Below the pieces are notes generated by a model. That model was not told the origin of the DNA. It saw nothing but the letters and a program-made list of their open reading frames with translations, and did not search any database. Positions 15 to 58,984 of a stretch of DNA of 64,000 bases are shown here, piece after piece (positions within the stretch are counted from its first letter, which is position 1; the number at the start of each line of letters is the position of its first letter). The stretch is from Glycera tridactyla. Lineage: Eukaryota. The translations under genes and the position numbers were made by a program. The stretch is taken from assembly GCA_965644265.1 (NCBI GenBank), contig OZ286461.1:96472001-96536000 (forward strand). The letters are read 5' to 3'.

Positions 15-2015
15 AATTACAAGAGGGATCCGTGCTGGCAGGACCAATATTGACTGCATTCATTGAGTCATCACAGGGTGGCACCACAATAGGACCCCTA
101 GTGACTACGACTGCTAGTGCCATCGTACAAGCCCTCACGGAACTAGGACCTGGTACTTGTCTCGAGCAGAATGAACTTGATCTCCTCGCCAGTGCACTCA
201 GTGGAATTGCCTCCTTGTAAGTTTTGATAATTCTTTGGCTATATCTGCCTCATAAATGCAGTTTCAATTTTCCATAGAGGACTGTACAGGCCACCATTGA
301 TTACTCAGATATGTTGGACGAGACATTTATAGATATTGTTCACTGTAAAATACTATCCTCATTATCGTCTACCATGGTTTTTGTGATCTCCGTTGGAGAT
401 CATTATGCTACCACCTCTCTGCTCGAAATGCTTTCTAACTTCGCTGATTCTGAATCTGGAGGCTGATATAATCAAACGAATATTGATCGGTTCTGTATAA
501 AAGGATCGAATGATCTAATCTAACACAATTTCAGGATGATTTATCGATCTGATTAATGACAATTTGAGGAAATGTAGCGATTACGTAATGGGCATTTCGC
601 CGTACATTCGTTTTTGTTGCCGATTACCGAAGCACACAGATACGACGGCTCAGAGATGTATAGCTACCCACAAATAGTAAATGCCTGTCAATCAAGTTCT
701 TTGGCCACGCCCACATCGGAAAATTAGTGCCTCTTGTTCACAACTCATTACCAGGTTTCATGGAGAAATACTAAACATACTGTTGGAATGATCATCTGTA
801 TTGATTCCTCGACATCCGACTGTCTTATCTGTATGCATAAATCTCGAAAAAAATCCGTTTTTGTTGATATGATCATTTGTAGGGGGGTAAAGTAGTGCTT
901 CTTGTTCACACCTCATTACCAGGTTTGATGGATCACTGCGCCGATTTATGAATGAAGTTGTAGATAGTGTGCGTAAAACCAGCCAATCAGAGATCAGCAC
1001 TCGCACGAATGACGTTGATTCGACGAATGCTTCAGTTTGTGATGGAACATGGCCCAAATTCCTGAAGGAGCGATTGTCATTATCACCGGAGATCACTCAG
1101 CGCAGCTTTGCGCTCTTGTTATAGGCAGGTGCCCTGGTACAACTTTGTATCAAGCAGATCCTATATGAAATTCACGAAGGGTTGGTTCTGTGTACCTTGG
1201 CAATATATACAATTGTACAAATGATTTGGTTCGTGATACGTAACATGGAACCTAACTTTCATTTTATTCTGACTTTGGATATTCATGTTTAGAGATCATG
1301 AGTTCTGGTCTAGCAGTTAGTGATGAACTTTCTGGAAATGACTGATTGTTGCAGGTTGGAGACAACGCTGACAGATATGCTGCAGCTTCTAGAGACCTCG
1401 GACCTGCCGGCAGATCTGGAGCTGGATATTGAAGTTGCTTTATCTGTGAGGAACACCCTCCGCGGTGTCATCAGTGAACTTCTGCAGAACCTTGGCGGAT
1501 CAATGATAAGTGTATTGGGTGAAGCCATCACAGATTTTGAGAACACCAACATCTTGGCTGCCATGTTGGAATTCCTTGGTGAGCATACAAATAAAACAAA
1601 GTACAACCTCGAGTTTCTCAATAGTGGCTCTTGACATTGTGAGTTTATTCACATTATTAGATCCAGCAGTTTTACCACACAATGATGCCAAACTAAGTTT
1701 GTTTACAATTTCTATCACTGTATTCTAAGTTGCACAACTGGTGCTAAACCGATTCATTTGAATCTAGACGTTTGTCCGTAAAGATCAGGTCTCTCTGTTA
1801 AGCAATGATCAGGAAGTTACTATATTGATGAATGATGCATTATCTTACCTAACGCAAGCTTTGTTGTAGTCTGTTGCTGAGAGTATGCTCGCCGTCATCC
1901 AAATTTCCAACACTGGCCCAGTATGGGAGTGACAATCCACCACGTCTGCAGCATGTTCTGCGTTTTTATGCCTCCGCCATATCATGGCGGATGGCATATA
2001 GTGTTTACCCTGTCA

Positions 2016-2047
<32 letters not shown>

Positions 2048-4580: not shown

Positions 4581-7500
4581 GTGAGTACCATCGAATCACA
4601 CACCTTCACTATTCTGAGAATGTAGCGAGTCCACATTCTGGGATTCACCCTAGGATTCACTGCCTGGCGTTATTAGGTTTGACAAGATTTCTTGTTGAAA
4701 TGATTGTCAATGTTTCTCTTATCAATTGTATTACAAGAATGTCCACTTGATATTTTCCCTTCGGTGCTCTTAACCATCGACCAGAGGATTGACATTTGAC
4801 GTTTCATCAAAGTGGTTATATTCATACTAATTTTCGATTCACTGCATTTCATCATTTCGATGACTTCGTGCAAAACTAGGCTAACTTCCTATAAATTCAA
4901 GCCTAGTTTTGCACTGAACCATCGATTTGCAGATGGCGGAATTCTATATAAAAACTATACAACCCTTCAATCATCGATCGAGAAACTGTCTCATGCTCAT
5001 TAAACTATTGCCTGTCTTGCCAATTTACTTTTATAATACTCTGAGAAGATGAATTGCTAAGAGAAGAATGAACAGATCAACTTTTCTAGGCGCTAACAGT
5101 GCTGCCATGCTGAGGTGACAAAGTACACAAAACCAGATCACTCCCTGATTCTGGGTGGCTTCATTTCAGATATTCGGTTATCGCCGGAGTTAGGAGAGAC
5201 GATTGTGGCGGATTTCATGACCGGTTTCCAAGCTGGTGAGGCCATTGTTTCCCTGGTGCCCACCCTGGCTGGCGGGATGATAGACGCTCTGGTTGATCTT
5301 GGGGATGGCAGATGTCTGACAGAGCAGGAACTCTCCCTCATCAGCGACACATTGATGCAAATACCAACACTGTAAGTGTCCTACTCGGGATGTATCCCTG
5401 TCCTGGGTATATCTATCTCACGGGTATCTATAATTGGTCTCTGTTTGATGTCTAGAATCATTGACATGCCATTATTCAACATTGATAAACCATTGAATTT
5501 TATCGAATACGCCTTGTTACTGATCAAAACAAGGTGTAAACAATATTGCTATACAAAATGCAATCTCTGCACTTGGACCATACCCCCATATATCAATGAA
5601 ACGGATCGCATGATCGAGTCGGATGAAGTCAATAAGGCTGCAGATCACCTATTCCAACTAGACATCATGAAGTTGAGACAAATCTCAACATCGTCACTGT
5701 ACTCACAAAAGTTGGTTCCCACTCATGAAACCAGTAGATAGACGATTGGATAGCAACTGACGTACGTTTAACGTAGCCACCCCTCATCTCGATTTAGGAC
5801 AGCGGTTTACGACACAATCTAGAAATGTTGAATAATGAACAGGTTAAATATTGTGAGGAACTGAACCGGCATCTCCTTCAAATGAGTACATGTTAGTACA
5901 TACTGAAAGTCCATATATGACAGTCGGGATTGTCCCCTTACTTTAGCCGGGATTATGGAGGAATCCCAAATGATCCCACCAATGCTCTTCGCACGGGCAT
6001 CATAATATAGAACCGATGGTGCCATTGAAACGTAGAACCACCCGCGATCTCGGAAGTCGCGGAACGATGCATGGTCCAGTCAAGAAAATACAATCGAATC
6101 TGTCTCCCGACCACTTCTGACCAGGGAGATAACCGATGATGGTTAGTCATAACATTTGGCGAGACTAAACTCTTCTTCCCTAGAAACGGAGTAGCATCTT
6201 CATAAATGGTGCTGGTTCGGAGTAGTACTCTTTGTATGTCGTTTGACGGTGTCCATCTGATCTCTGGTTACAGGCTGGGGCAAGTAGAGGCCTCTATGCT
6301 AGAGTTCCTGCAGACTGCACCTCTTCCCATCGAGGTGACCCTGGACGCCGAGCTGAGTCTGCAGGTGTCGGGTGTACTTCAGGGCGCCATCTCCGAGCTG
6401 ATTGCTCACCTTCAGCAACTTGTACCTGCCCTTGAAGATGCCATCATCAACGCTAACCCAGCAAATACCATCGGTGCTATCTTACAGTTTGCTGGTATGT
6501 GGATTGCAGGATACTTTGTCAAATCCATTTTCAATAAACCCTTCTTGGTCAAAAACAATGCTTTCTGACTGTCACCCTCTCGCGCAGACTCGTGTCCCAT
6601 GTTCTGAATTGATCGTTAATGAAATAGACTACCTTGGAAAATGTGGCTTAGGAGTCTTACAATCGATATTTGGTTGAAATAACCGATGACCTCAGATACA
6701 AATCTGAGTTATCAGTATTACCAATCTGCATTGTAGTTATTCTCTCTGCAGACAATTTATTCAGCAAACAAATAACTTGTTCTATTCTAGGAAAATGGCT
6801 GATACCTGAATGTAGGTTGGCCCCAACCTTATTGGCAGGATATTTGTTGCACGGCTAGAAAGTATTCTGAATATTGGTTTTGAAGAACTCATTCCAGTTT
6901 GAATCTTGCCAAGGAATAAGATTGTTTACCCCTCGGCAGTTTACAAATATTCAATGATGTGGAGCATAGATATTGAAGTTACATCGCGCATTTTGTCAGT
7001 GAACTGAGACCGCTATCCTTAAATAACCACAAATTTTGACTGGTTCGTTCACACCAAATGAAACATGTCTTTGTAAATGACCCAAATTTCACATCCCTCC
7101 CAGAGGGCAATCCTCGAACTTCTATTGGGAGTATATCAACTTTTTTCGCATATGTTTAGGGGAGTTGACGCCTCACTTGAGCCTGGATTTCCTGTTGAAT
7201 GAAGTATTGCCGGGTAAGTTTGGAGCAATTGAAGTTGGAATCAACTTTTTCTCCCTAGAAATAACATTAGTATCTATACATGTATCATACTCCAAATGTA
7301 CTGGTACTAATAGAAGTATCCTTGGGGCCTCTGTTCTGTGAATATGATTGGTAGTCACCTTATTTGTGAATATATCAATGGACTATGAAATAACATTCGG
7401 ATTCCGAATGCGAATGATCTTTAACCCCTTCTGAAACCATACATTGAGCACGGCCGCAATGGTCGTCAACATTCTACCTAAAGCGGTCTTTTTTATTTCA

Positions 7501-10500
7501 GTGTGCCCAGGTAGACGTTCTCGACAGAGGATTTTAGTGCTTCCATGATAATTGAGCTGAAATGAGTGAATTTCGTACATATAAATCACATTTTGTAGGC
7601 ATTTTTCCTCCAGATTTGTCGGTGTTGCTGGAGACTGCCCTTTCTGAGATCAGCCTACCGGTGGCGGGAGCTACGCTGGTCACGGAGCTTGCTGCTGACG
7701 AGTTCCTGGCGCTCTCCGCAAGCATCTTTGATGTCCTCCAATATATGATCGAGGCTACTGGCCTAGACTTCTGCTCCGATGGATTACCCAGAAATGAAGT
7801 CACACTAGTAGTTGGTGAGTGGATTTGACTGAATTTAGTTCACTTCGCAGGTGGGTGGGACAATCCTCGTGAAGTAGTGTCTTGAGCTAAACAATGTCCT
7901 GAACATTTGCTTAGGTTAGCAAAATATGTGCTAGTGGTATATATGGGCTGGTGGTATATATGGGCTGGTGGTATATATGGGCTGGTGGTATATATGGGCT
8001 GGTGGTATATATGGGCTGGTGGTATATATGGACTGGTGGTATATATGGACTGGCTTGAAAAAATGTTTTATTTGCAGGTGTGGTCGAGAATCTGCTGACC
8101 TTCCCATTTCAAGGACCTCTGCACACGACGATCCTGAACCTGTTGGACTCACAGGACCTGGATGAAGCTACCCTGGAGCAGGTTCACCAAATCCTCGAAC
8201 TGAGAATGAGCCAGATGGATAATCTTATCTCGCCATTCTTCGCTGAACGAGTCGAAACTCTGGAGGGAATTCTCCCTGGTGAGTTGAAACTGGTGTTGTG
8301 ATAGGATATCAATCTGATCTGAAAACTCATCGCTACTCAAGTTACGGTATATCGAAAACTGTGCATTCAAACTTGCTATAACGCCCTTCTCCAAATTACT
8401 GACCAGAAGTACTGCACCTATTATCTGCCACAAAAGATATTTTTCGCCCTGTTCGACATTAAGTTTTATGCTGGCAGAATTCCATCCCGATAATTTCAAT
8501 CATGTGAAAACTTTTCGTATTTAATATTCAATAGATCCGTTTAATATTCAACAATCCATAAGTCGGGTATATGTACCCTCTGTAATGTGGGAACCTGTCT
8601 CTTTTACTGTTTTACCAGCTGGGATTTGTATTTTAGGATTACTCATTGAATTTGTCATCTCACATACAATTAGCTATAATTTGATTGTTTGGTAGTTAAG
8701 ATTTACTGGAGGGGGGGGGGGGGCGACTCACTTGCGAGTACATCCCTTACCGAGCACAAAGGTATTAGAATCCTTCACATCCTTGCATCTCTTCAGGAGT
8801 TGGGATTATACAAGGGTGATTGTTGGCCCCGTTGTTTTCAGAGCTGTCGTCGGCTGCCAGCGAGGCCGGGTCGCTGCTGGCGGAGTGCATGTCTCTCTTC
8901 CTGGAGGGCCGCACAGCCGAGGACCTTGTCGGCACCGCCGCAAACAGCATGTACAATGTCCTCGTCTCACTCGCCCCAGGGGACTGTCTCCCCGATAACC
9001 AAGTCGCACTTCTGGAGGAGGCACTGGAAGGAATTCCGGACTTGTGAGTTACCGTATGCTATCAAATCTGTTCCAAAAAGAAATTTCAAAATGGAAAAAT
9101 TTGAATCAAAATATATCAAATATGTGGACTAGTAGGTTTCGGAGCCTTCAGACCACCCTTGGTTGTGGTCTTTGTATGCGGGGGACCATTGTAGATGTGA
9201 TACTGTGAGAAATACTATCGCGGTCACTGCTCGGGGTGACTTTTGAAGTATATACTGTCGAACCTGCTAGACCTCTTAAACAATCTATCACGAGTATTAT
9301 TTGAGATTCTTGATAATCTTTCGGTGTCCTGTGAAACATGGAAAGATGAGATGTATAGTAACGCTAATCATATCATGCTGGATAGTTGGCAAGTTCGTTC
9401 GATCTGTTTCTCGGTAGGTTGGAAGAAGTGTACACGTCTCTGGTTGAGTTGGTAGACACGGAGGTTCTACCGTCTGAATTGCAGCTGGCCGGTGATCTGA
9501 ACGCATTGCTGATGAACACGTTACGCGGGGCTGTCTTTGAACTCGTACAAAACCTGGAAATAACAATACCCGACTTACGGGAAGCTCTCCTCCAGGGCAA
9601 TCATCCTAACGTGATCAACATCCTTCTGCAGTTCTTCGGTAAGTAATGCTCATAGGCGTTTTATTCAGATTTTGAACACCGGATGTATCAGTATTGATTG
9701 AACTGCTGCGGAATCGTAGAATCAGAAGCGCGGGAAGGTCCTCTAGCGGTGCCAATATTAACTGATAGTTTCCAAGAGTGACACTTGTGTCCACCCTTGC
9801 AAATTGCAAGTCGATACCACGGGAGATGGTGTTTACTATCAATAATAGATGTTCACGGTCACCGAACCCTGTAGAGTAATGCTAATGTTAGATATCTTGA
9901 AGATTATCTATATTTTTCATGTTACCTAAAGAATTGGAGAACCTTTCGAACGTAAGCTTTGTATTCTCTCAACTTTGAAACCGATTGCCCGAGATCCTAG
10001 TCTTTTTGGCTCACACTGGCCATAATAGAATAGGTGAAAACCTTTTGGATCCGATCAAAACTGTTCAACTTTTCCTTAGTGCTAAAAGATAGGCCAATCT
10101 TGACAAGACCAGCAAAATTCCATTGCAAAAGAGCTACACTTATATTAGCATCCGTCGACGTTGCATATCATTGTCATATTACACAATGAGAACTGGAATA
10201 AACCCCACCAGCAGAATTAATAACTCGTGTTGGCAATTGAAGTGAAACCGTCTAAAGGGTAATTGTAAGCTTCTGAATCTAGAAATTGCATATCTGTGAT
10301 GAAATGAACCATTTAACTTGTTATGAGTGTGTTGCTTTGTGTTTAGGTCAACTGACACCAAACATGAACATAGACTTCCTCTTGGAACTTCTCCCACCAG
10401 ATGTCGAGTTCGGTAAGTAAATCACAACTGATCACATTGATCGAGTGCTTCCTGAACTCTACATGTCCATGTACGATCCCCACGTCCTCCCATATTTTCA

Positions 10501-28500: not shown

Positions 28501-31500
28501 AAGCTATGGAACCCGTCGGAAACGTGCTACCGCGTGAGTGAAGATTCTTCTGTCTTTGCTGTTTGCTGAACTTTGATTTATTGCTCATATAAGACCCGCC
28601 AAGAAATGAGTCCAAGGTCTATTGATGGCAGCCACCAATGAGCGTGGGTCATTTTCTTTGAAGTGTTGCCATCGGGAATGATGTGGCCTAGATGTAGCAT
28701 CATCCCTTCTCTTTTTCTCAATAGTCGTGTGTGTGTGGGGGGTTGAGTGAAAACATACCTTCAAATTCTCTGTCATCTGTCTAGGCAATTTCTACCAAAA
28801 TTACAATCACCATGGTTTCTTTTTCCTCACCTCTTTTCTATCCCTCTAAGCTCTTATTTCTTCAGCAAAATGGTCTCAGGTGTAGGTAGCTAACGGTTTG
28901 CCTGTTGCAGATATTGTCGCTAAGCAAAAAGCAGGTACCAGGCACACCAGTTCTGGTTTACTAGGGCTGCGACTAGGTTACTAGGAAGTGTGATGGCATT
29001 GTATTGCTAGCTTTGGGATACTATAATTGTAAAGCTGGTTTGAAGTTGGCAGTTTTTTTAAATGGCCGCTACGGTTGAGTATTCTCCAAACCTAATGCTT
29101 TTCAATGTGTCAAGTACTGCACTTTGCAAAATGAGCATCGCTATCAGGCTAATGTTAGCTTCCACCCAGTCACATAGTTAGATATGCCATCAAGGTTTAT
29201 TATGTTTTGTGCAGAGTAGGTAGAGGTGTCTGAACTGTCAGCTACTCCTACTTGACAACCTTTCAGGTTGCCCATCATCTAGTGTTCAGGGTTTGTAGAG
29301 GAGAGAACAGCTAGCTTTCATTAACCAGGAATCCATGGCATACATAATCTTAGGGTTGATACAAGCCGTTAAACCGCAAACAATCCTTAATGCCAGCTAA
29401 CGATTTATATTTGTACACATGCCGGACAGTATGGATCAATTGTATTGGTAGGCGTGTGGTTCGATGTTCCAATAGCACTAGTTTAGCAATTCTTAATCCT
29501 GTACACCTAATGACCCGATTACTGACTCACACCCATCACCAGCTCAGCAACGCTATATCCAACCAGTCATATTTGTTACTGTTTTCAGAGATTGAGTTGG
29601 CCGTGGAGTTAGCTGAGGGAACTCTAGGACAGATGCTGTCCTTCTACCAGACCCTGCCAACAGTGGAGGACTTGGTCAACACTCAGACCAGTCTGACAAT
29701 ACAAGCCATCATACAGCTGGGTTCTGGACGCTGTCTGACACAGGAAGAAATCACCCCACTCAGTATTCTACTCTCTAGTATCCCAACATTGTAAGTAAGC
29801 TGGTGGAATAAGTAGTTTGTGATCTTACACTCAGAGCTACAAGCTAAGCATTACGTGGCTTGAAACATGGCATCAAATCCAATGCAAACTCAGGTCAACT
29901 GATAGAAGTAAATACCTCTTTCACATGAAGATTGGCTGGTCAGCCTCTCTCCATGGCAAATAATTTGAATTCGGCCTGAAGTGTCCTCTGTCAATTAGGT
30001 GATATTCCCTCACGTCATTTTGTTTCTTTTGATGAATTCAGTCTTCAAAACATTCATTTGATCAGGTACACCTTAATCTCGGAAATAAGATCTTTAAGAA
30101 ATTCAACTGCACTGAATATCAATTTATCGTGATGTACATGAATATCACCACTGGAGAGGACAGGATCTTCTGTGGGATCTTCACAGCAATACCACGCATC
30201 TGCAAAGTGTAATCGCGTAATCACCTGCCTGATCTTGTAATATTGTTTTGCCGCTGTAGGCTGGAGGAGGCAAGCAGTACGTTGGCGGAGCTACTGGAGA
30301 CTGCCGACCTGCCTGGAGAGATATTGCTGCCTGGTGATCTCGGCATGGACGTCGGGGTGGCCCTGGGAGCAGCTGTAGATGAACTGGTCGGAGATCTAAC
30401 GATGATGGTATCAGGGTTGAATGTGGCCCTTGAAAGCCAGGACCGAGTCGGCGTCTGCCTTGCTATGGAAACATTCCTAAGTATGCTCATCCTAAATTGT
30501 GAACGTGAATACATTACCAAAATTACTTCAAGATAATAGAAGACTATGAATATTGATGGCATAATTGACACTAGTCTGTCTAGTCCTAATGTGACTCTTA
30601 CGCAGATTGGCTGCGCGAATGCAATGGAATGAAATCGGTACATCCACTTTAGGTGGGCTGAGTATCTGAATATGGTCTGACAATCGCTGAAAGTTTCTTA
30701 CGAATTCGTCAAGAAAATTCGCGAATCGTGGCATAAGGGTGTGAAACCTACTCGTCCCCTTTCGATTCGACATTACTGATTCGAACTAGTGTTTGCGTCG
30801 TGGAGAGGGTTGGTGCTGCGCGATGGACATGCTGCCATCTACTGTGAGAAGTGTAAACTATCCTCTCTTCAATCACCTAAGCTCATCCACATTCATAATA
30901 TGCCTAGAACAATTATAATCCTATCAATGGGGCATTTGTCCGATCCAGATATGTACGCCTTGGTTGGACGACAGTGTGAGGTTTGTAGTATTCTGATCTC
31001 CGTATGAGATGCCTAGTTATTGCCCTTTATTCACCAATCATCAATGAACAATTGATCTGATCATTTGGAATATGGATGATACTCTTATAACCAGAGTTCT
31101 ATATACCGAATGTAGTGAATGGAACATGTTTCAGGTGAACTCTCTCCCAATATGGATCTGGATTCTCTTCTGGAGGAATTCCCGCCAGATATTGTCTCAG
31201 GTAAGCACTCGCATCAATTCAGTCGTGAAGTAGCATGCTCAAATGGGACCGGTATCGTCCAATACTCGACAATTTTTCTTGACAACAGTATCAGCTCACA
31301 CCTATCTGCCTGCCCGTCATGCCACCGCGATTTCTGCCCCAAATCAATGTATTTCCCCACCCCTTCTGATCCTGATTTGATCCTGATTTGATCCATCTCA
31401 TCTCCCGTTGTGGTTTCATCGTTTTCGGCTAGGTTGAGAAGGATTTCCTTGCAACATTCGCCGGTGGTGCGCCAGGGTTGTGTTGCACCGCCATCCACAT

Positions 31501-34500
31501 CCACCACTATTGTATCAGGTCTCTTGATTTCTAGAAATCCTGAGGAATATCCCCGCATCGGTAAATGAACATCTGCATGATATTTTCTATACTTCAAGCC
31601 AAACGCATCAGACACTTTTCCCAGGGTTTTAATCATCTTTCAAAACTCCGCCATGTTGTGGGATTGAATTATCGACATTTCTCTGAATTTTCAGACTTGC
31701 CTGAGCTTCTGGCGTCTGCCATCAGTGAGATCGGGCTACCAGCTGTGGAGACGCCAGTGACGGAGATGACGGAGGAGGAACGCCTGCAGATGGTGACCGC
31801 TGTCAGCCAGCTGGTGGGTCATGTGATGGATGCAGCTGGACTTGCCTACTGCCAGGATGCCCTGCCCCTGAATTACATCACCCTGGTCATGGGTAAGCAA
31901 TAATTCACAAATTCGGATCTCGAATGGGTGTCAGATTTGTAAATCTAATCACATTCGACCCTAGAATTGAGCCCGACTAAAAAACATAGCTATGCATATG
32001 CATAATGGATATATTCTGAGTATATTGCTTTACTCAAGGTAGGTTGAAGTACGCAACCCTTAGCTGTGTGAGTTCAGAATTCACCCATCGAAATACCATC
32101 AATCGTGATCGTGATAGCATTTTATTCAGTAAAGAACCCTTTTACAAAGGTCACCTGTCTAGAAGTCGGCTATTGGCGCGACCGAGGGTGGTCTTTGTAG
32201 GCAGGTACAACTGTACCTATACTAAGCGTGAATGCTCTATGCATGTGATTTAACTCTCCTGGCCAGATATGCAGGAGAGGGTTGGCTATATTTGATAAAG
32301 GTTCGCAGCTCACTATGTACCACTCTTCTCTTTCAATGCAGGTGATCTTGCCAATATTCTAACGATGCCCTTCCACCCTCTTCTGCACCATACCGTCATG
32401 ACTCTGCTGGATTCCCAGGGCTTGAACGAGGCCACCCTGGAACAGGTTCATCAGGTCCTTGTAATGAAGATGGACGACTTTGACACTATATCAACTGACG
32501 CATTTGCAGAGCATCTGGAGGCAATCGAGGGCGTTATTGGACGTGAGTATATTCTAATATCGTTTTTATACATCACCTGCATTCTATATTACTGGCGGAT
32601 TTACCGAACTTATCGGCTGTGAATCGGGTCAGGCCACAACACTCTTGCCACGAAGTGTTCGAAATTGATTTGGTGTCAGGGTACATGTTATGAGTGGTCT
32701 CCCGTGGAAATCCCATTTCTAGTAGGCGTGCTCATTTCAATCATATGTGGATTAGCGACAAGAACATACACATCAGGTTTGAACTTCATACCGGTCATTT
32801 CCAATCTGAAATGGTGCATTCCCACACCATTGCTGCGACTGATTTTCCGTGGAATTCGACTTCACATGTCGAAACATTTCTTAGTTGACCCCAATGCTGC
32901 GAATTTCTAGATTCATTGTTTTCAAACGATCATGATCGCCATATCGCTATGATTTCCCATGCAAACCATGGCCGATAACGTCGGCATATTGATCAATTGA
33001 TGCGATGGAAAAAAATCAATCCTCATGAAAACTTGGAAATCACGTCCAATAAAGCGTGGATTCACATTCCACTAATTCCTTTTTCCATGCATGGAGACCT
33101 TGTTATATATGGATTAGAGTTGCTCGGAAAATTCAAAAGATCACATGTTCACTCCAATTCTTATCCACTGAGTTTGGATTCGAATCTCCTATGTTTAATG
33201 TTTACAGCGCTGGAGTTGAGTATAGAGTTGACGGCGTCGGACCTGGTTGGATTCATGTCGGCCTACCGGCTCGCACCCTCGGTCTCTGAGCTGATCCCAC
33301 CCATGGCACAAGGCATGATTCAAACCCTCACACAACTAGGCTCAGGGCGCTGTCTAACCGAAGCCGAAATCACTTCCCTCAGTGCTCTACTCACCGGTAT
33401 ACCGGATATGTAAGTGACATGAAACTTCTAAAATCCTACTAAACTCCGTCGAATCCAAACTTGGCGGGTACGTTTCAGACGCGAACTTTGCCCTTTCTTG
33501 CCAGATTAAAATTTTAATGGCACGAATGTATGGAGGTCTTCCGACGATTATCGAATGTCTCAGTGACTCTGTATGCTTTTGAAGTGGGTGGTCGTGGGAT
33601 TATTTAGTGGGGTACAGGTATAAGGATGTGAGGTAGAGTAGCGGACAAGGTGAGGTATTGACAGACATGTAGATAAAGATGTGCATTTGCTAGCTATAGT
33701 AATTGGTGGACAAGCCCCGAGTCGGCCTCAAAAGTATGATTTGTGATATGATTTATATGCTCCCCGCTCTTGCCTAACTAATTGGAAAAAATCCAGCTCT
33801 TGCCCATTGCACTACCCCATCCTCCACCATTGATGCTGCCACCATTTAGTTTGTAATGGGTTTATTCAGATTCGTGATGTGCAAAGGCTATATTTGGGGA
33901 CAACAAAATGAATGAGGGTTGTGAGAAACGGCAACTACTCCTCAATTTGTGCAGACTTGGTTATAGATCTAAATGTTGAATCAATCTTTCGATTCGCCGT
34001 CTTGTACTTCCGGTATGCGCGCTACCTACAGGGAGAACTTTCGTAGATGAACACAACATGACCTACATGATCCCGTGACTCCCGACTAATCCATCATATT
34101 TTGTAGATTGGCAGAAGTAAACGTTGCCTTGATCGAAGAGATTAGTTTGAGTGGATTACCCGCATCACTGATGCTATCCTCGGAGCTGGAAAGCCAGTTG
34201 ATGGCACTTCTGGAAGCAGTCGTCAATACACTTGTTGGAGACCTGGAAGTGATCGTACCTGAACTCAATGAGGCACTCCTTGGTTCCAACGTCATTGGTA
34301 TCTCTAATATTGTAATAAACTTGATAGGTAGGTTTACTACGAGATCACATGAAAACACTAATCATTCACAGCAAGTATTTTGCTGCAGATATTACGGGGA
34401 ATTCAACATTGTACTGATCATACTGCCGACCTTTCTAATCCTATTATAAATTTCAGGGGATGGGAATGAGTAGGATAGTGAATGGTGAAAGCTGTCAAAT

Positions 34501-37500
34501 ACTGCGTGGTATATGCATGCACATGCTAGCTCATGGTATCTCCCAGAACGTCCCACTCACAAGGATAGCATTTCTGAAATTCAGTGGCATTAAAATATCA
34601 TAGACCAACTGCTTCAACTTGGGACATATATATCTTTGAAAGGTTTTCGGGGTGAGCGCAGTAGAACATAAGGTATCAGTGGGTGGAACAAATTACTTGC
34701 TTGATCTTCAATATACCATATGTGTCTGAGGCCTGTGGAGTAGATATCTCTATAGATCCCTCCAGATATTTCATGAAAGTGTGAATTACAGGACTTTAGC
34801 TGAACAAGATAATTGACTAGGTTTCAAGTGGCCGACCTTACTTTGTAGGTGATCTTCAGTCTCAACTGGACCTGGAGACCTTACTTGAGGAACTAACACC
34901 CGAGTCAGGTGAGTGATGGAATCTCCTCGTTTGGTATAAGGACAGTCGACCTGTATCTTTGATGTCGGTGATCAATTGGCATGGAACCTGCCATTGTTGC
35001 GATCCGGTCGATTTTCTACGAAAGGCTATCTATCCTTCACCTCTGCTCAGAAGTGCTTCAGCAATGGTGGTGCGGGTCTAGATGTCTTATTGGCGAGTGC
35101 GCTATGGATTTAGTCTTGTCAATCTTGAGGTCAGTCATAGTGGGAACTATTGCTTCCTGTCGGCTTCATAAAGTTGTTTCCAGGAGACTGCGATACATAC
35201 TTTCCTACATGAGAAATGATATTACCATTCACATCACTTTGTGCATATATGATTGGTTTCGTAATATTCAAACTGCTGTTACTTTCTCAATATAGCATGC
35301 CAATGTATTCGTGAATATTATCAGCACATTAAGCAATAAGATTGAAATTCGGCATTCTTGTTAATACATGCTGGTACAGTAAATATGAGTCAAGTGTATC
35401 AGTTATTGTTCTGACTTCATATCTGCTTGATAAGAGGCATTAGGTATACCAATCCATTATCTTTCATACCGATGCAAGTACTTAAAGAAAGTAATTGTAA
35501 TTAATTCACTTTTGTAGAGTTAGAAGTGCAGTTGGCTGCGGCTATAGAGGAGATAGGTTTACCAGTACCGAGTGGTACCCCGATGTTATATCTGACGGAC
35601 ACTCAACGTGCTTCTACCGTTAGCCTCATGAATGACTTGATACGCTACATCATCCAGCACTCTGAACAGGACTTCTGTGAGCAGGGCCTCCCAAGCAGCC
35701 TGCTCTCTCTCGTCTTAGGTAAGTGCTATATATCATGAATCCTGGTGTTTTTACAGGCGTATAACGGGTGCTTTTTGCTGAATGTGGGATCCGTCTCTTG
35801 CATAGTAGGTCGACAATAAGATAGTGTTGTGGTTTGAAGCGGTCCGGTCAGATCATACTTCCTGATTTTCCGTCATTGTAGTATTCACAACCATTTACCT
35901 GTATTACTCAACCGCCTGTCTCTGCTACTTATTTTGGATTTCCAGGTGGGGTTGCCAGGTTCAATTAGTTTTGCTACTTTATGTATCCCCCTCCTATAAC
36001 TTAAATTGGCCTCAGTGGTCCCTGACCGCATTCCCAATTACAGTACTTTGAATTATGGAGACAAGCCACTGGCCTACTCGTCTCGTAGGGAATTGTGGCC
36101 ACTTGTACATGAATATACATGAAAGCCCAAGATTTTGTTTGCAGGTGAATTGGATGCCTTCCTTACCTTCCCCTTCCATGGACCACTGAACTCTGCCATC
36201 CTGAGTTTGTTAGATAACGAGGGATTAGATGAAGCAACCCTGGCACAGGTACACCAGCTGCTAGAACTGAGGGTGCAACAGATGGACGATCTGCTCGACC
36301 AAGCCTTCTCTGACGAAATAGCCGAGTTAGAAGGAATTCTGCCTGGTGAGTTTCTCGATCAGTTGATCAGCCATTGTCAGAGCATCCGTGAGTATCTGAA
36401 CGATGCAAATCCATACGCCCAATTTAAGTTATTCCACCTGATCGTTAGTACTTTCGCCATATAGAAATCTACCGATATTGCATGATGCTTGAAACTGCGT
36501 ATTCACTACTGAAGCAGTGACTGAATCTTATTTTGGTTTTGATTCGGGGCATCTCCAGCTTCTTGTGGGCAAACACTCTCAATAAGCTGACTAGGCCAAA
36601 TGAGGTCTTGAGAGAACCGAATAGCCGTGATATTTTCCACGATACCAGACACGACTCGTCCATCTGCTTTAGCTTTTGGCTTGGGTTTATCAGAGCTAGT
36701 TCACTTCTGCGCCGAATCAGTATTAACAGCATGGGCTTCCGATTCTAATGTGTGAAGTGAATGGATGGCGGTGGTGTTGCAGATGTGGAATTGGCGTCGG
36801 GTCTTGCTGGTTCCTACCTAGCAGAGTACGTCGCGACGTATTTGAGTGGTACTCCAGTAGAGGACGTCGCCATTATGTTTGCTTCTGGCAAGTTTGAGGC
36901 CCTGCTGCAGCTCGGAAGTGGTAGCTGTGTCTCTGACTCCGAGATCAGCCTGATAGAAACGACCCTCACTCGCATACCCAGTCTGTGAGTAGTAGCCATG
37001 CAGAGAAGATACTAGTAGCTGCCTAAAGAAATCCCTATTAGATAAATACCCTTGTGGTCATACCCCTCCACATATCTCTTAACAGGCGCGGGCCGCTCAT
37101 ACCTTTACATGTTGGTCCACCATGATGGCCTTTGAGAATTAAATTCCATTGGTTCAAAAATCTGCTCCGATCTGATAAGATATAAACAAAACTTATCTAT
37201 CCATGGAAGTCATTGGTCATTCCCTAGCCAATCGTAATCATTGGACATCTGAACCTTTGCTGATTCTGATGTGGCAAGCTGAAGCATTTATGCCTATCAA
37301 CTATTGTTATTCACATGACTGGAGTTTTGTGGGGCGAGGACCACATGGAAAGTGTAATCAGGTCATGAACAGCACTCACATGGCCAACCATAGGCTTACG
37401 CACAATTTTGGCAGATTTTATTTAGCCCATGGAGTGTCTACATAAGCAGTCTTTGGCAATCCAAATCTGGTGTGTACGTGAGCTCTCCTGTGGTCATTGA

Positions 37501-39803
37501 AATGTGAAATGACAACAGGTTTTACCAGCACCAGTGGCATATTTTGCCAAAACATATGTAGATAGTATGTCCCTCTTGCAACCTATCACAATAGCAGGTT
37601 CGATTTGGTTGATGAAAGTATCATATCATCTTTTCAATGCTATTTATTGTGTGAAAAGATGAGTTCGAACCAGTCAAATATCAACTGAACCTTGCAGGCT
37701 GGAGGAGGCGTATATGAGTTTGACGGATCTGATCGAGACAGAGGTACTTCCGGCGGAAATGACGTTTTCAGCCGAGTTGAACACTCAGGTGATGAACGCA
37801 CTGCGTGGAGCCAGTATCGAGCTGTCACAGGACCTGGAGACGGCAATACCAGCACTCAGTCAAGCCTTGCTTACAGAAACCGACTCTGCTTACCACTGCT
37901 GTAACGTAATGCTGAACCTTATCAGTACGTATCTCTTACCATATTATGCCACACTTGCATGATTTTCTGCGATAATAGTATGATATCACTTGAAATACTC
38001 CTCGGTTGGGAAGTATTGCGGGACTGTTTTTGCTGTTTGAGCTTACTGGTACCCTAGCTTCTATAAATATATGAAACTGTGCTGATGGATAGGGTACAAG
38101 TGAGTATGGAAGGTGAACAAAATGGCGGATGCGTGTTGTCAAGTCATATCTCACGAAGTAGGGCGAAGATTATAACAAGAACAAGAGAATTGATGAGGGG
38201 AAAAAGTTTGACTGTGGCATAAATGCAAGAACTGGCACCATGAGTGGTCCCTCGTGATATCACTTCCCCTGCAATCCTTCGGTTGCGATATCATCGATCA
38301 GACGACCCAGGTTGGAGATTCTTGCTATAATCGCAAAATTCATCCTTTCCAAATTATCTTAGGTGGAAATGTTACTGCTATGACTGCTGAGATTCTCAGC
38401 ATTGGTTGCTTCAGTGTTCATAGTGCTATTGGGATCAGCTTTACTATTCCGCAACGAACATGAAATGGTTGCGAGTGGGGAGAAATTCCTTGTAGGTCCC
38501 CAACAGGTGAAGAATGAAGACATCCCGAGACCGGTCATCTATCCGTAGATCAAGCCATAGAACATATGTCCCGATTACTGATCCCATGTTGTCTGTTCAC
38601 ATTTAAAAACTAAATTGTGAAAAAGTTTGCCAGGGTCGACTGCGAGCTCGTTGATCAATACGTGGATATGACAAGTACGTTTGACACAATCAACTTTTCC
38701 AATGTATATGTACATACCCATCTGAAAGTTTCAACGATGGTCCGACTGTACAGCCACATTGTTATCGAATAAGCATATCACTGAATGTTTCCGCTTTTCT
38801 AATTTCAGCTGAAATGATCCCTCATATGAATTTGGACTGGTTACTACAACTGATAGAAGAGGAAGAGGCAGAAAGCGAGCCCTCAGAGCCCGGTGTTATC
38901 TTACAAACGCTTGATATTAATGCTATCATCGAGCACATAATGTCGCTGGCCGGCGATGAATGTAAGTTGACTTGTCAAATCGAATTCAAGTCTTTTGTAA
39001 GGAATTCTCAATATAAAGCCAGCCAGTGCTTTTCATGTAGAATCATTGAAATCCCATGTGCCTATCTGGTGCCTGTCCACAAGCATGCACTCTGAAACGA
39101 TTTTTTTATGAAAGCCAGTGTGAATTTACTGTAGGAGCAGTAATTTTTGAACTGATCCAAATGTGACTTTATCATGAGGGTGTAAGATTACAGGAAACAT
39201 AGATATCCACCAGTGGTGCGAAAAATTTCCAAGAAGGCTGCCTGGCCATATTCCAGGATCCACTCAGAATCAATAGTTCCCAATGCTTTCTGTATGATAA
39301 TGTGATAGGCCTCCATATATAAGACATTTTGGTTGGAATTCTGGAGCATGTTTGGTTTTAGGATTGGTTAGAAATGCCTTGAATGACATCTCGATAGAGG
39401 ATATCCGCCAACTAATGCCTAATTTCCTCATGATTAGTGACAATCTTTACTGTGTTCTACTGTTGGCCTCGATATGGTTTACTTATTATTTTGAAAAAAG
39501 GCCCCGTACTTGCATTACAGGTATGTGTGGATGACTTATTTAATTTTTTCTGAATTTGCAGTGGCTGCGATGCCCGACATGGATGTACCCCCAACAGCCT
39601 TCTTCATTAGTTTCCTAGACAGCCTGATCTACCGCATGCACGAGCTGGGCATCTCCAACTGGGACGTGATCGGCATGTTGTTGGACTCGCTTCAGTACGC
39701 CTTCGCCAACTTCCCCGAGCAGGACGTGTCCATACTGCAGAATGCCTTGCGTGAAGTCCAGCTGACCAGAGTCTTGAAACGGCGCCGGGGTCTCATCCAC
39801 TGA
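15..39803 (+). CDS. 5'-partial 54-exon gene encoding a giant (>3250 aa) acidic, Leu-rich, nearly Lys-free tandem-repeat protein of unknown family (10 full five-exon cassettes + A/B/C' + terminal exon)
   Basis: All 54 exons are bounded by AG/GT, phases chain 1-2-1-1-1 with no junction stop, exon lengths recur (202/221/201/201) and the translated exons are mutually homologous. Summed length is 9752 nt, +1 nt from an upstream exon = 3251 codons including TGA at 39801-39803. Confidence 0.93.
1963..2535 (+). mobile_element. Non-autonomous Helentron-type element (HINE / DINE-1-like) in intron B1-C1
   Basis: 5' TTTTT-ATGCCTCCGCCAT-atc-ATGGCGGATGGCAT palindrome; (GT)13 microsatellite at 2016-2041; ~2.8 tandem 147-bp units (starts 2055, 2202, 2349); 3' subTIR GGAGGCAT (2501-2508, reverse complement of 1968-1975); stem-loop GTGTCC-tat-GGACAC; end CTTTCTAGTT. 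This layout matches the published HINE architecture. Confidence 0.75.
5170..8278 (+). CDS. Cassette 2 exons: A2 5170-5371, B2 6274-6494, C2 7160-7213, D2 7614-7814, E2 8078-8278
   Basis: Lengths 202/221/54/201/201; motifs LGDGRCL, GELTPHLSL, GLDFCSDGLP, PFQGPLH; AG/GT boundaries in the expected phases. Confidence 0.93.
7934..8052. repeat. 17-bp minisatellite (GTGGTATATATGGGCTG)x7
   Basis: Five perfect copies and two copies with a G>A variant, counted directly. Confidence 0.95.
8842..11641 (+). CDS. Cassette 3 exons: A3 8842-9043, B3 9418-9638, C3 10347-10412, D3 10779-10979, E3 11441-11641
   Basis: Lengths 202/221/66/201/201; LAPGDCL, GQLTPNMNI, GLEMCEVG, PFHGPLYH. Confidence 0.93.
12200..14824 (+). 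CDS. Cassette 4 exons: A4 12200-12401, B4 12735-12952, C4 13235-13318, D4 13976-14176, E4 14624-14824
   Basis: Lengths 202/218 (one-codon deletion)/84/201/201; LGAGTCL, GQMLPQLNL, GLNYCQQGLP, PFHGPLHN. Confidence 0.93.
15488..17782 (+). CDS. Cassette 5 exons: A5 15488-15689, B5 16218-16438, C5 16792-16860, D5 17083-17283, E5 17582-17782
   Basis: Lengths 202/221/69/201/201; LGSGECL, GEMVPNLNLESLL (AAG acceptor), LEWCETGVP, PFHGVLNN. Confidence 0.91.
18756..21317 (+). CDS. Cassette 6 exons: A6 18756-18957, B6 19529-19749, C6 20159-20224, D6 20487-20687, E6 21117-21317
   Basis: Lengths 202/221/66/201/201; LGAGSCM, GDIGPQLNLESLL, GLDYCDDTLP, PFHGPLHN. Confidence 0.93.
21915..24740 (+). CDS. Cassette 7 exons: A7 21915-22116, B7 22547-22767, C7 23107-23181, D7 23933-24133, E7 24540-24740
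   Basis: Lengths 202/221/75/201/201; LGDGACL, AEITPSLNLESLL, GIAYCEDGLP, PFHGPLHS. Confidence 0.93.
25562..28533 (+). CDS. Cassette 8 exons: A8 25562-25763, B8 26322-26542, C8 27162-27227, D8 27570-27770, E8 28333-28533
   Basis: Lengths 202/221/66/201/201; VGTGRCL, LSMESLLQTFPP, NLVYCTDGLP, PFHGPLNS. Confidence 0.92.
26043..26128. mobile_element. Terminal fragment of a Tc1/mariner (pogo-like) MITE
   Basis: Sub-repeats (ctataaaagccacc / tatataaaggccacc) ending GGTGGCCTTCATAGACGGGTTTGACTG + TA, i.e. a CAGTCAAACC... TIR next to TA. No partner TIR found. Confidence 0.45.
27829..28040 (+). repeat. Dispersed repeat family R1, copy in intron D8-E8
   Basis: Aligns by eye with 29090-29385, 40593-40870 and 51445-51580 (atagttagatatgcca...gtgtctg.actgtcagc...cttga.aa.ctttcaggtt.ccca...gaccaggaacac...gggttgatac). 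Confidence 0.8.
29090..29385 (+). repeat. Dispersed repeat family R1, copy in intron E8-A9
   Basis: Same core as the other copies; shares an extra ~85-bp 5' extension (ctaatgct...catcaggct..gttagctt) with the 40593 copy. Confidence 0.8.
29589..32542 (+). CDS. Cassette 9 exons: A9 29589-29790, B9 30260-30480, C9 31135-31200, D9 31695-31892, E9 32342-32542
   Basis: Lengths 202/221/66/198 (one-codon deletion)/201; LGSGRCL, MDLDSLLEEFPP, GLAYCQDALP, PFHPLLHH. Confidence 0.93.
31214..31560 (-). pseudogene. Possible decayed APE-type endonuclease fragment of a LINE, antisense in intron C9-D9
   Basis: 140-aa ORF with RPDTIVV...ENDETTTGDEM...GSEGVGKYI...CELILL, loosely resembling the PDII..TETWL...RGGGVG.YI...E pattern. 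Catalytic motifs are not intact. Confidence 0.3.
32127..32215. mobile_element. Short degenerate MITE related to the 26043-26128 fragment
   Basis: Left CAGTAAAGAACCCTTTTACAAAGGTCACC is an imperfect inverted repeat of right GGTGGTCTTTGTAGGCAGGTACAACTG + TA. Confidence 0.4.
33208..36345 (+). CDS. Cassette 10 exons: A10 33208-33409, B10 34107-34327, C10 34849-34908, D10 35518-35718, E10 36145-36345
   Basis: Lengths 202/221/60/201/201; LGSGRCL, LDLETLLEELTP, QDFCEQGLP, PFHGPLNS. Confidence 0.93.
36783..38961 (+). CDS. Final partial cassette: A11 36783-36984, B11 37698-37924, extended C11 38809-38961
   Basis: A11 202 nt (LGSGSCV); B11 227 nt (two extra codons, ends YHCCNVMLNLI); C11 starts like other C exons (EMIPHMNLDWLL), continues EEEEAESEPSEP plus a helical segment and ends at a strong T|GTAAGT donor. 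Confidence 0.87.
39562..39803 (+). CDS. Terminal coding exon (unique C-terminal tail, ends ...LTRVLKRRRGLIH*)
   Basis: Pyrimidine tract + GCAG acceptor, phase-1 compatible with C11, same acidic/Leu composition, TGA followed by AATAAA 72 nt downstream. Confidence 0.82.
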
Positions 39804-39874: not shown

Positions 39875-39880
39875 AATAAA
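39875..39880 (+). promoter_or_regulatory. Probable polyadenylation signal of the repeat-protein gene
   Basis: AATAAA 72 nt after the stop codon, followed by GT/T-rich sequence (ctgttatgtctc). Confidence 0.65.
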
Positions 39881-40592
39881 CTGTTATGTCTCGGGTCATG
39901 GACTTTGTTCGTTATTCTACTCTGTATTGGTTGGTGAGAGCATTGTGAAGTTGGCATTTCCGGTTGAAACAAACGCAATGTTACTGGAACAGGCGTTGAA
40001 TAAAAGAACCAGCTGCAATTGTTCGGGATGGCTACCAACGTTCACACCAAACAAAGGGAAGACCAGTGGGATGTCAGATGTCAATAATCCCATCAGTTTC
40101 AATCTGCCTGCTTTGCGGGGACATCATGAGAACATGAGTAAGTGGTCCATCTACTTTGAACAAATATATAAGGGTATTTGATGTCTTCATCAATTCATGG
40201 AGGTTTTCTGAAGCGTCTGGAACCTTCGCGATGTGGCATAGATGGAGGCGCTTTCGCTAATAGGAATTCCACCGTGAATGTCTTGAATTTCATAGATTTT
40301 CACCTTCCATGGGGTCGCGAATGATTCTACCCATGCTTATTGCATGGGCGTCTCAATAAAGCGCAAATTGTACATATTCAAACAAAACAAACCATCAAAT
40401 TTTATACTCCTTGATTTGCAAGCCTGGGCTGATTGATACATCAGTAATCGCAGAATATTCGTCTAAGGTGAGAGATCAGTGTTGCCAATTGCACCTAAAA
40501 GGTTCAACACCTAAGTCATCTCAACCAATCGGGAATGTCCAGTGTGCACTTCACCAGTCATTTGGATATTGGGATAAATTTGAACAGGCCCA

Positions 40593-54619: not shown

Positions 54620-54860
54620 TGTCCGTCTATCTGCCTCTTTGTCTGTTTCTGTCTCTGTCTCTGCCACTGTCTCCGTCTCTACCAGTCTCTCTGTTCGTCT
54701 CTGTCTGTCTGTCTGTCTCTGTCTTTGTCACTTTCTCTGTTTATCTGTCTGGTTGTCTGTCTGTCAGTCTCTCTCTGTCTCTGTCCGTCTGTCTGTCTGT
54801 CTCTCTCGGTTCTGTCTGTCAGTCTGTCTCTCTTTCTCTCTTACTCTCTACCCCTCTCTT
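54620..54860. repeat. Degenerate (TCTG)n/(CT)n microsatellite
   Basis: Direct inspection. Confidence 0.9.
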
Positions 54861-58906: not shown

Positions 58907-58956
<50 letters not shown>

Positions 58957-58984
58957 TGTGTGTGTGTCTGTGTGTGTGTGTGTG
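58907..58984. repeat. (GT)n microsatellite
   Basis: About 39 dinucleotide units with two GTCT interruptions. Confidence 0.95.

What the first reader, a model, noticed from the sequence alone, without database searches (positions are those of the whole stretch)
15..39803. Near-total exclusion of lysine: 3 Lys in ~3250 residues, with a strongly acidic surface
Seen (manual count): Lys occurs only in E9 (replacing the conserved Arg), A11 and the C-terminal KRRR, excluding the unknown first split codon. Arg is about 40 and Trp is 3, whereas Asp/Glu and Leu are abundant in every exon. Independently diverged repeats all avoid Lys, so this looks selected rather than inherited. Inference: possible reasons include resistance to trypsin-like proteases (gut, mucus or egg-coat secretion), avoidance of amine cross-linking, Ca2+/cation or mineral binding, or economy of an essential amino acid in an abundant secreted protein.
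Basis: partly seen in the sequence, partly recalled or inferred. Interest (0 to 1): 0.75.

Follow-up and report, generated by a model that had tools for sequence, protein, structure and literature searches.

The report
Giant acidic worm protein lacking lysine
The window holds the last 3,249 codons of a huge, expressed, previously undescribed repeat protein of a probable annelid worm that has only three lysines, far fewer than chance or descent can explain; why lysine is excluded is still unknown.

Summary
Observation confirmed exactly. A 54-exon model on the + strand (15-39803) reads as one open frame of 3,249 codons. It has 3 Lys (in E9, A11 and the C-terminal KRRR), 40 Arg, 3 Trp, 19.6% Leu and 15.7% Asp+Glu. 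Computed pI is about 3.3 and net charge about -467. The longest Lys-free run is 2,655 residues.

Spliced, polyadenylated RNA contigs confirm all eight 3' junctions tested. They differ from the window mostly at synonymous sites.

The protein is 10.6 tandem copies of a five-exon unit of about 297 residues. Copies are only 33-50% identical, yet exon lengths are almost invariant.

Among at least 883 accepted replacements, 2 are Lys, against about 40 expected from mutation. Out-of-frame AAR triplets are not avoided, so selection acts on the protein.

The only relatives in 1.84 billion proteins are exon fragments from one metagenome sample: 714 residues with no Lys.

No Pfam, PDB or fold match was found.

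Arg and His are also depleted, so positive charge in general is excluded, with extra pressure on Lys.

Trypsin resistance and amino-acid economy are poorly supported. Whether the protein is secreted or intracellular could not be settled, because the 5' end lies outside the window.

The parts
15..39803 (+). 3' part of one giant gene: 54 coding exons, 3,249 codons plus stop. The gene continues upstream of the window.
   Evidence: Exon HMM hits and splice sites. Single open frame. RNA junctions.
15..4580 (+). Unit 1: A1 15-216; B1 1355-1578; C1 2975-3049; D1 3664-3864; E1 4380-4580
5170..8278 (+). Unit 2: A2 5170-5371; B2 6274-6494; C2 7160-7213; D2 7614-7814; E2 8078-8278
8842..11641 (+). Unit 3: A3 8842-9043; B3 9418-9638; C3 10347-10412; D3 10779-10979; E3 11441-11641
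12200..14824 (+). Unit 4: A4 12200-12401; B4 12735-12952; C4 13235-13318; D4 13976-14176; E4 14624-14824
15488..17782 (+). Unit 5: A5 15488-15689; B5 16218-16438; C5 16792-16860; D5 17083-17283; E5 17582-17782
18756..21317 (+). Unit 6: A6 18756-18957; B6 19529-19749; C6 20159-20224; D6 20487-20687; E6 21117-21317
21915..24740 (+). Unit 7: A7 21915-22116; B7 22547-22767; C7 23107-23181; D7 23933-24133; E7 24540-24740
25562..28533 (+). Unit 8: A8 25562-25763; B8 26322-26542; C8 27162-27227; D8 27570-27770; E8 28333-28533
29589..32542 (+). Unit 9: A9 29589-29790; B9 30260-30480; C9 31135-31200; D9 31695-31892; E9 32342-32542 (holds Lys 1)
33208..36345 (+). Unit 10: A10 33208-33409; B10 34107-34327; C10 34849-34908; D10 35518-35718; E10 36145-36345
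   Evidence: The junctions B10-C10, C10-D10, D10-E10 and E10-A11 are seen in RNA contigs.
36783..38961 (+). Truncated unit 11: A11 36783-36984 (holds Lys 2); B11 37698-37924; extended C-type exon 38809-38961
   Evidence: RNA junctions 36984/37698, 37924/38809 and 38961/39562.
39562..39803 (+). Unique terminal coding exon ending ...TRVLKRRRGLIH plus stop. It holds Lys 3 and 6 of the 40 Arg.
   Evidence: RNA junction 38961/39562.
32467..32469 (+). Lys codon AAG in E9, in the column that is Arg in the other nine E exons
36890..36892 (+). Lys codon AAG in A11 (ASGKFEAL)
39777..39779 (+). Lys codon AAA in the C-terminal KRRR cluster
39875..39902 (+). AATAAA signal at 39875-39880 and poly(A) addition at about 39902
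   Evidence: An RNA contig runs into a poly(A) tail after 39902.

Best explanation
Shown:
- The window carries the 3' 9.75 kb of coding sequence of a real, spliced, polyadenylated gene under purifying selection.
- The product contains at least 10.6 tandem copies of a five-exon unit of about 297 residues. Two of its exon modules are predicted alpha-helical. The unit has a Leu-rich conserved core and two invariant Cys.
- The product is an extreme polyanion (pI about 3.3, net charge about -467 over 3,249 residues).
- Cationic residues are removed by selection acting on the protein. Arg is accepted about 5-fold less often than mutation supplies it, and Lys about 20-fold less.

Inferred, my preferred mechanism:
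- The protein works as a very large, uniformly negative and chemically unreactive helical scaffold.
- A positive charge would create intra- or inter-molecular salt bridges and so cause self-association. The Lys epsilon-amine in addition would make the protein a substrate for covalent chemistry: cross-linking by quinones, aldehydes, transglutaminase or lysyl oxidase outside the cell, or ubiquitin inside it.
- I lean towards a secretory or extracellular setting, with roughly 40% weight on that location. The grounds are the two invariant Cys per unit, the phase-1-flanked duplicable module, the C-terminal dibasic cluster, and the parallel depletion of Trp, Tyr, His and Cys.
- The location is not shown.
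For: Gene and expression:
- Open frame through 54 exons.
- Eight junctions and the poly(A) site are seen in RNA contigs of four runs.
- Between those contigs and the window, 29 codon changes are synonymous and 9 nonsynonymous, none to Lys or Arg.

Folded repeat, not low complexity:
- Exon lengths are 202 / 218-227 / 54-84 / 198-201 / 201 nt, kept in copies that are only 33-50% identical.
- 102 of 274 columns are conserved hydrophobic.
- AlphaFold models of the E and D modules are helical, with pLDDT 80 and 74.
- Entropy is 3.8 bits.

Selection against cations:
- Lys makes up 2 of at least 883 accepted states, against 4.3-4.6% of mutational input. Arg makes up 1.6% against 7-8%.
- AAR triplets are not avoided out of frame.

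Lys-specific excess:
- By residues the ratio is 3 Lys to 40 Arg (P = 2e-5).
- Counted by independent alignment columns it is 2 against 18 (P about 0.005-0.012).

Relatives:
- 714 residues of D, E, A and B exons on contigs of one metagenome sample carry no Lys.

Lean towards a secretory setting:
- The Cys in A (G.G.C) is invariant in 11 of 11 copies, and the Cys in D (C..GLP.N) in 10 of 10.
- Among the top 200 human lysine deserts, 65% are in plasma-membrane or matrix proteins (PMC10169902).
Against: - No signal peptide or N-terminus is available, so the location is untested.
- An all-helical, Cys-poor (0.8%) composition is more typical of intracellular proteins (own knowledge).
- Four of the ten E modules give sub-threshold matches to DEK_C, a domain of intracellular proteins.
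- The absence of N-x-S/T sequons (0 against 11.6 expected) looks like secretory-pathway selection. However, the reversed motif is almost as depleted (2 against 11.5), so it may only reflect the structural context of Asn.
- The Lys-versus-Arg excess is only moderately significant once shared ancestry of the repeats is allowed for.
- The relatives may be upstream units of the same species and not another species.
Confidence: 0.5

Rival explanations
1. Intracellular lysine desert. The protein is cytosolic or nuclear and excludes Lys so that it cannot be ubiquitylated (or SUMOylated or acetylated). That would give a very costly giant protein a long life, as in BAG6, UBQLN, Slx5 and San1.
For: - The Lys-over-Arg discrimination (3 against 40) is the signature of described lysine deserts (PMC13696103, PMC10169902).
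- The fold is helical and Cys-poor.
- E modules give weak DEK_C-like matches.
- The terminal KRRR fits a monopartite nuclear localisation pattern (own knowledge).
Against: - Described UPS deserts lie mostly in disordered regions and reach at most 950 residues. Here the desert is a 2,655-residue run of ordered-looking repeats.
- Arg is also strongly depleted, which ubiquitin avoidance does not require.
- There is no UPS domain, and there are two invariant Cys per unit.
Confidence: 0.25
2. Charge only. Selection is simply for maximal negative charge (cation or mineral binding, electrostatic repulsion, hydration). Lys is not treated differently from Arg, and the surviving Arg residues are structural positions that Lys cannot fill.
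For: - Arg (1.2%) and His (1.5%) are depleted too.
- The Arg residues cluster in a few columns: E42, A47, B36.
- By columns, the Lys deficit relative to Arg is only P about 0.005-0.012.
- Net charge is -467.
Against: - Lys is accepted about 4 times less often than Arg relative to mutational supply.
- At the one conserved Arg column, Lys has appeared only once in ten copies.
- The relatives carry 12 or more Arg but no Lys in 714 residues.
Confidence: 0.2
3. Acid-compartment adaptation. Like pepsin, the protein has few basic residues so that it carries almost no charge, and stays stable or condenses, at low pH (gut, acidic secretory granule).
For: - Basic residues total 2.9%.
- Computed charge falls from -467 at pH 7.5 to -165 at pH 4 and +36 at pH 3.
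- Pepsin's paucity of basic residues is established knowledge.
Against: - With GRAVY +0.46 the uncharged form would probably be insoluble.
- This explanation needs no excess of Asp/Glu and no Lys-over-Arg bias.
- There is no evidence on tissue.
Confidence: 0.1
4. Protease resistance. Lys is excluded to escape trypsin-like or Lys-specific proteases.
For: Only 42 tryptic fragments, median 50 residues. Lys-C would cut three times.
Against: Trypsin-like enzymes cut after Arg as well. Arg is retained and even conserved (E42 in 9 of 10 copies), at about 4 per unit. This explanation would work only against strictly Lys-specific proteases.
Confidence: 0.07
5. No selection: a Lys-free founder unit was amplified and Lys has simply not yet arisen. 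Alternatively, Lys is spared for nutritional economy.
For: All units descend from one ancestral unit.
Against: - Copies are 33-50% identical, with at least 883 accepted replacements and 2 Lys against about 40 expected.
- 813 codons lie one step from Lys.
- Other essential residues (Leu 19.5%, plus Ile, Val, Thr and Met) are used lavishly.
Confidence: 0.03

Closest known systems
Lysine deserts of ubiquitin-proteasome components (BAG6 950 aa, UBQLN2 521 aa, Slx5 398 aa, San1)
   Same: A long, evolutionarily maintained stretch without Lys in which Arg is tolerated. It meets both operational definitions: at least 150 Lys-free residues, or at least 50% of the sequence.
   Different: - The Lys-free run is at least 2,655 residues, about 2.8 times the longest human UPS example listed.
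- It lies in diverged, ordered-looking helical repeats, not in disordered regions.
- Arg and His are also depleted.
- There is no UPS domain, and the location is unknown.
Extracellular and plasma-membrane lysine deserts (e.g. LOXL1), noted but unexplained in PMC10169902
   Same: Lys-free regions in proteins outside the reach of ubiquitin. Avoidance of Lys-linked cross-linking has been proposed as the reason. This is also my preferred reading here.
   Different: The LOXL1 desert overlaps a predicted disordered region. Here the desert is a giant tandem-repeat polyanion, and extracellular location is not demonstrated.
Catalytic A chains of ER-trafficking AB toxins (Arg-over-Lys bias)
   Same: A strong Arg:Lys bias that base composition does not explain.
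   Different: The toxin chains are small enzymes with normal total basic content. This protein shows no homology, no enzymatic motif, and depletion of all basic residues.
Alpha-zeins / prolamin storage proteins (own knowledge)
   Same: About 19-20% Leu, helical tandem repeats, virtually no Lys or Trp.
   Different: Zeins are small, Gln/Pro-rich, nearly uncharged plant proteins built of 20-residue repeats. This is an animal protein with 16% Asp+Glu, only 4.5% Gln, and 297-residue units. No sequence similarity was found.
DEK C-terminal domain (Pfam PF08766)
   Same: Four of the ten E modules give weak matches (best 20.6 bits) over a helix-turn-helix stretch, and the predicted E module is a three-helix unit.
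   Different: All matches fall below the gathering score of 24.8 bits. The PDB profile search gives E = 0.38 for DEK, and there was no fold match.

Membership tests
Lysine desert (operational definition, Szulc et al. 2023 as quoted in PMC13696103) | Continuous Lys-free region of at least 150 residues, or covering at least 50% of the sequence | tested here: met
   Lys-free runs of 2,655, 355 and 229 residues within 3,249
Lysine desert | Not a low-complexity artefact (Shannon-entropy filter of Kampmeyer et al.) | tested here: met
   Whole-protein entropy is 3.81 bits. Mean over 40-residue windows is 3.47 and the minimum is 2.84. Repeats are 33-50% identical. Their exact cut-off was not applied.
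Lysine desert | Lys absence conserved in relatives | tested here: inconclusive
   714 residues of related exons from one metagenome sample carry no Lys. These may be other units of the same or a sister species. No annotated orthologue exists.
UPS-type lysine desert | The desert lies in an intrinsically disordered region of a ubiquitin-proteasome component | tested here: not met
   Modules are predicted helical with pLDDT 74-80. The hydrophobic core is conserved. No UPS domain was found in Pfam. Cellular role is not testable here.
DEK_C domain (PF08766) | Score at or above Pfam's gathering threshold (24.8 bits) | tested here: not met
   Best score is 20.6 bits, and 4 of 10 E modules match at E <= 1
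Secreted gel-forming polyanion / mucin-like protein | N-terminal signal peptide | not testable with these tools
   The 5' end of the gene lies upstream of the window
Secreted gel-forming polyanion / mucin-like protein | Pro/Thr/Ser-rich low-complexity O-glycosylated repeats or Cys-rich D/CK domains | tested here: not met
   Ser+Thr is 14.9% and Pro 4.6%, both interspersed. Cys is 0.8%. No Pfam domain was found.
Prolamin / zein-like Lys- and Trp-free storage protein | Gln/Pro-rich short tandem repeats, near-neutral charge | tested here: not met
   Gln is 4.5%, Pro 4.6%, Asp+Glu 15.7%, and the unit is 297 residues

The most novel reading that the evidence does not exclude
This is the founding member of an undescribed class of giant secreted 'inert polyanion' scaffolds. 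It would be a folded helical-repeat protein purged of every side chain that takes part in biological cross-linking: Lys about 60-fold, Trp about 13-fold, Tyr about 3-fold, and Cys and His about 2-fold below typical animal usage. That would let it stay soluble and un-cross-linked inside a quinone-, aldehyde- or transglutaminase-hardening secretion (tube, cuticle, chaetae, cement or mucus) while binding cations. It would also be the longest non-repetitive lysine desert known.
Probability: 0.15. Interest if true: 0.8.

Novelty: new variant of a known kind. Interest (0 to 1): 0.62.

Why it matters
Lysine deserts are a recent topic. Tested examples are intracellular, mostly disordered, and at most about 950 residues long. 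Why extracellular and structural proteins have them is an open question (PMC10169902).

This gene offers an extreme natural case. It has at least 2,655 consecutive Lys-free residues in about eleven independently diverged, ordered-looking copies of one domain. Each copy therefore acts as a replicate of the selection experiment.

The family has no annotated relative in 1.84 billion proteins. Trypsin-based proteomics would also be almost blind to it, with only 6% of the sequence in usable peptides. That may be why nothing like it has been described.

Finding its location and partners would show whether Lys exclusion serves charge, cross-link avoidance or escape from ubiquitin.

Tried and rejected
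Family and structure searches that found nothing:
- Pfam on 24 exon peptides gave nothing above threshold.
- Rfam on the window gave nothing.
- PDB profile searches with all four large exon types gave nothing below E = 0.01.
- Foldseek against PDB and the ESM-Atlas shape search with the E model gave only generic helices.
- Atlas feature searches for E1 and the terminal exon scored below 0.85, so there is no lead.
- The word-index protein search with E1 was blank, but it only sees proteins of 86-273 aa.
- The exhaustive profile search found 5 short exon ORFs only.
- The JGI metagenome scan returned the same sample again.
- hhalign among exon types A, B, D and E showed no mutual homology, so the unit is not a fourfold module.

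Other dead ends:
- A literature search for the sample codes and for Lys-free annelid proteins found nothing.
- An alternative exon at 39362-39523 was rejected. It would create a TGA at the junction and is absent from the RNA contigs.
- N-glycosylation sequon absence was considered as proof of secretion. I set it aside as ambiguous, because the reversed motif is also depleted.

Not done:
- I did not fold a whole spliced unit, because spliced sequence cannot be given by reference and I did not type it.

Full report
**What is there**

The window is AT-moderate animal DNA (GC 0.35-0.47). Open segments on the + strand between 1 and 39.8 kb fall into five recurring peptide types. Iterative HMM searches place them in a strict A-B-C-D-E order, with 11 A, 11 B, 10 C-type, 10 D and 10 E copies, plus a last extended C-type exon.

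Every copy has canonical AG and GT sites at the same codon phase. The intron after A is phase 2 and all others are phase 1. Joining the exons gives a single frame without a stop.

A diverged C1 exon at 2975-3049 was found at low threshold with perfect splice sites. It brings the model to 54 exons and 3,249 codons. The frame ends at 39803. AATAAA lies at 39875. The gene begins upstream of the window.

**Expression**

Four public runs of one study (organism coded) hold spliced contigs, one of them 9,145 nt long. These reproduce every junction from B10 to the terminal exon exactly (34327/34849, 34908/35518, 35718/36145, 36345/36783, 36984/37698, 37924/38809, 38961/39562). They end in poly(A) after 39902.

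The contigs are about 95-96% identical to the window. Of the listed differences, 29 codons change synonymously and 9 nonsynonymously, and none changes to Lys or Arg. This is a functional gene under purifying selection.

Earlier notes of this scan on other pieces of the genome call the animal a probable annelid. I did not test that.

**The observation**

- Lys 3: E9 at 32467-32469, replacing the Arg that the nine other E exons have; A11 at 36890-36892; and KRRR at 39777-39779.
- Arg 40, Trp 3, Leu 19.6%, Asp+Glu 15.7%.

Further properties:
- pI is about 3.26 by my own titration. Biopython's 4.05 is its lower bound.
- Net charge is about -467 at pH 7.5.
- GRAVY is +0.46.
- The longest Lys-free run is 2,655 residues.

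Against chance, the AAR frequency in the gene's own introns predicts about 123 Lys (P = 6e-50). Position-specific base composition of the exons predicts about 96. The two other frames of the same exons contain 83 and 30 AAR codons. The avoidance therefore acts on the protein and not on the DNA or RNA.

**Selected, not inherited**

- Copies are 33% (A), 35% (B), 39% (D), 42% (C) and 50% (E) identical on average.
- Even so, exon lengths are almost fixed: A 202 nt in all 11 copies, E 201 nt in all 10, D 201 nt in 9 of 10.
- Summing distinct residues per column gives at least 883 accepted replacements in 302 columns. Two are Lys (0.2%).
- By contrast, 4.3-4.6% of all possible nonsynonymous single-base changes of these codons yield Lys (P = 1e-14).
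- 813 codons lie one step from Lys.
- Arg is accepted at 1.6% against a supply of 7-8%, so cationic residues in general are selected against.
- Lys is hit about four times harder than Arg. By residues the ratio is 3 to 40 (P = 2e-5). By independent alignment columns, which is the fairer count, it is 2 to 18 (P about 0.005-0.012).

**Relatives**

A profile of the ten E exons was searched against 1.84 billion representative proteins. It found five proteins of 72-105 aa and nothing longer. All five are prokaryote-style ORF calls on short contigs of a single metagenome sample (SAMN14350216, GCA_013332675.1). The JGI metagenome scan returned the same assembly.

The contigs carry D, E, A and B exons in the same order, with introns of about 250-670 nt. 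Their 714 residues of exon sequence contain no Lys and at least 12 Arg.

Nucleotide identity to the window's exons is 67-76%, the same range as paralogous units. I therefore cannot say whether they come from another species or from upstream units of the same or a sister species. No annotated homologue exists.

**What kind of protein**

- No Pfam family reaches threshold. Four of the ten E modules give sub-threshold DEK_C matches, best 20.6 bits against a cut-off of 24.8.
- PDB profile searches with all four large exon types found nothing.
- AlphaFold models of the E and D modules are helical, with pLDDT 80 and 74. They have no specific structural neighbour.
- The four large exon types are not homologous to each other.
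- 37% of aligned columns are conserved hydrophobic and almost free of Asp/Glu. The other columns are 24% Asp/Glu. This fits a folded helical core with an acidic surface, which is an inference.
- Each unit has two invariant Cys: G.G.C in A (11 of 11) and C..GLP.N in D (10 of 10).
- There is no charge-free (Asp/Glu/Lys/Arg/His) stretch longer than 26 residues.

**Why lysine is excluded**

- Trypsin resistance is weak as an explanation. Arg is kept, partly at conserved positions, and trypsin would still give 42 fragments.
- Economy of an essential amino acid is weak, because Leu, Ile, Val, Thr and Met are used lavishly.
- A founder effect is excluded by the replacement count.

Three readings remain.
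(a) A uniformly negative, chemically inert scaffold in the secretory pathway or outside the cell, where amines would be cross-linked.
(b) An intracellular lysine desert against ubiquitylation.
(c) Pure charge selection, with structural Arg residues left over.

For (a):
- The invariant Cys pair and the phase-1-flanked module.
- The terminal dibasic cluster.
- The parallel depletion of Trp, Tyr, His and Cys.
- Most long human deserts are in membrane or matrix proteins (PMC10169902).

For (b):
- The helical, Cys-poor make-up and the DEK_C-like hint.

The complete absence of N-x-S/T sequons (0 against 11.6 +/- 3.1 in shuffles) would favour (a). However, the reversed motif is nearly as rare (2 against 11.5), so I treat it as ambiguous.

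I give (a) about 40%, (b) about 25%, (c) about 20% and acid-compartment adaptation about 10%.

**Comparison with the known**

The phenomenon is the known 'lysine desert'. This case meets the operational definitions and passes an entropy check. It differs from tested cases in several ways:
- Size: 2,655 residues against 950 in BAG6.
- Ordered repeats in place of disordered regions.
- Co-depletion of Arg and His.
- It lies in a protein family with no described member.

I file it as a new variant of a known kind.

Trypsin yields 9 usable peptides covering 6% of the protein, while GluC yields 161 covering 72%.

Noticed in passing
window 15-39803 (whole protein model): No N-x-S/T glycosylation sequon in 3,224 residues (the 53-exon model, before C1 was added), against 11.6 +/- 3.1 in composition-preserving shuffles (0 of 5,000 shuffles reach 0). 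The reversed motif [ST]-x-N is also depleted (2 against 11.5), so the cause may be structural context and not secretory-pathway selection.
   Followed up: partly
window 37698-37924 (B11): The truncated last unit lacks exon D and its invariant Cys. B11 carries a two-residue insertion and an unusual Cys-Cys (..SAYHCCNVM..). This may be a compensating partner for the A11 Cys.
   Followed up: no
window 37981-38330 (intron B11-C11): RNA contigs of the same runs partly match this intronic stretch. They show odd non-GT/AG joints and loose ends running into unrelated sequence. This is probably a repetitive element transcribed elsewhere.
   Followed up: no
window 62329-64000: A 104-bp satellite with 16 copies at 98% identity, running off the end of the window.
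   Followed up: no
window 7924-8053 and 2054-2403: Intronic tandem repeats: a 17-bp unit x 7.6 copies between D2 and E2 (it reads as WYIWAGGIYGLVVYMG in frame), and a 147-bp unit x 2.4 copies between B1 and C1.
   Followed up: no
window 57118-57546 (- strand): An open segment resembling the C-terminal part of a non-LTR retrotransposon reverse transcriptase. It is flanked by masked N runs (57778-58081, 58555-58868) and by TG and TCTG microsatellites (54630-54859, 58907-58984).
   Followed up: no
L004:360-626: A much more divergent E-like exon (E = 3.6e-5 to the profile; ..GPFEGPFQEAVYTMMEELEEE..) in the same metagenome sample. It is also Lys-free. It may be a distant unit or a paralogous gene.
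   Followed up: partly
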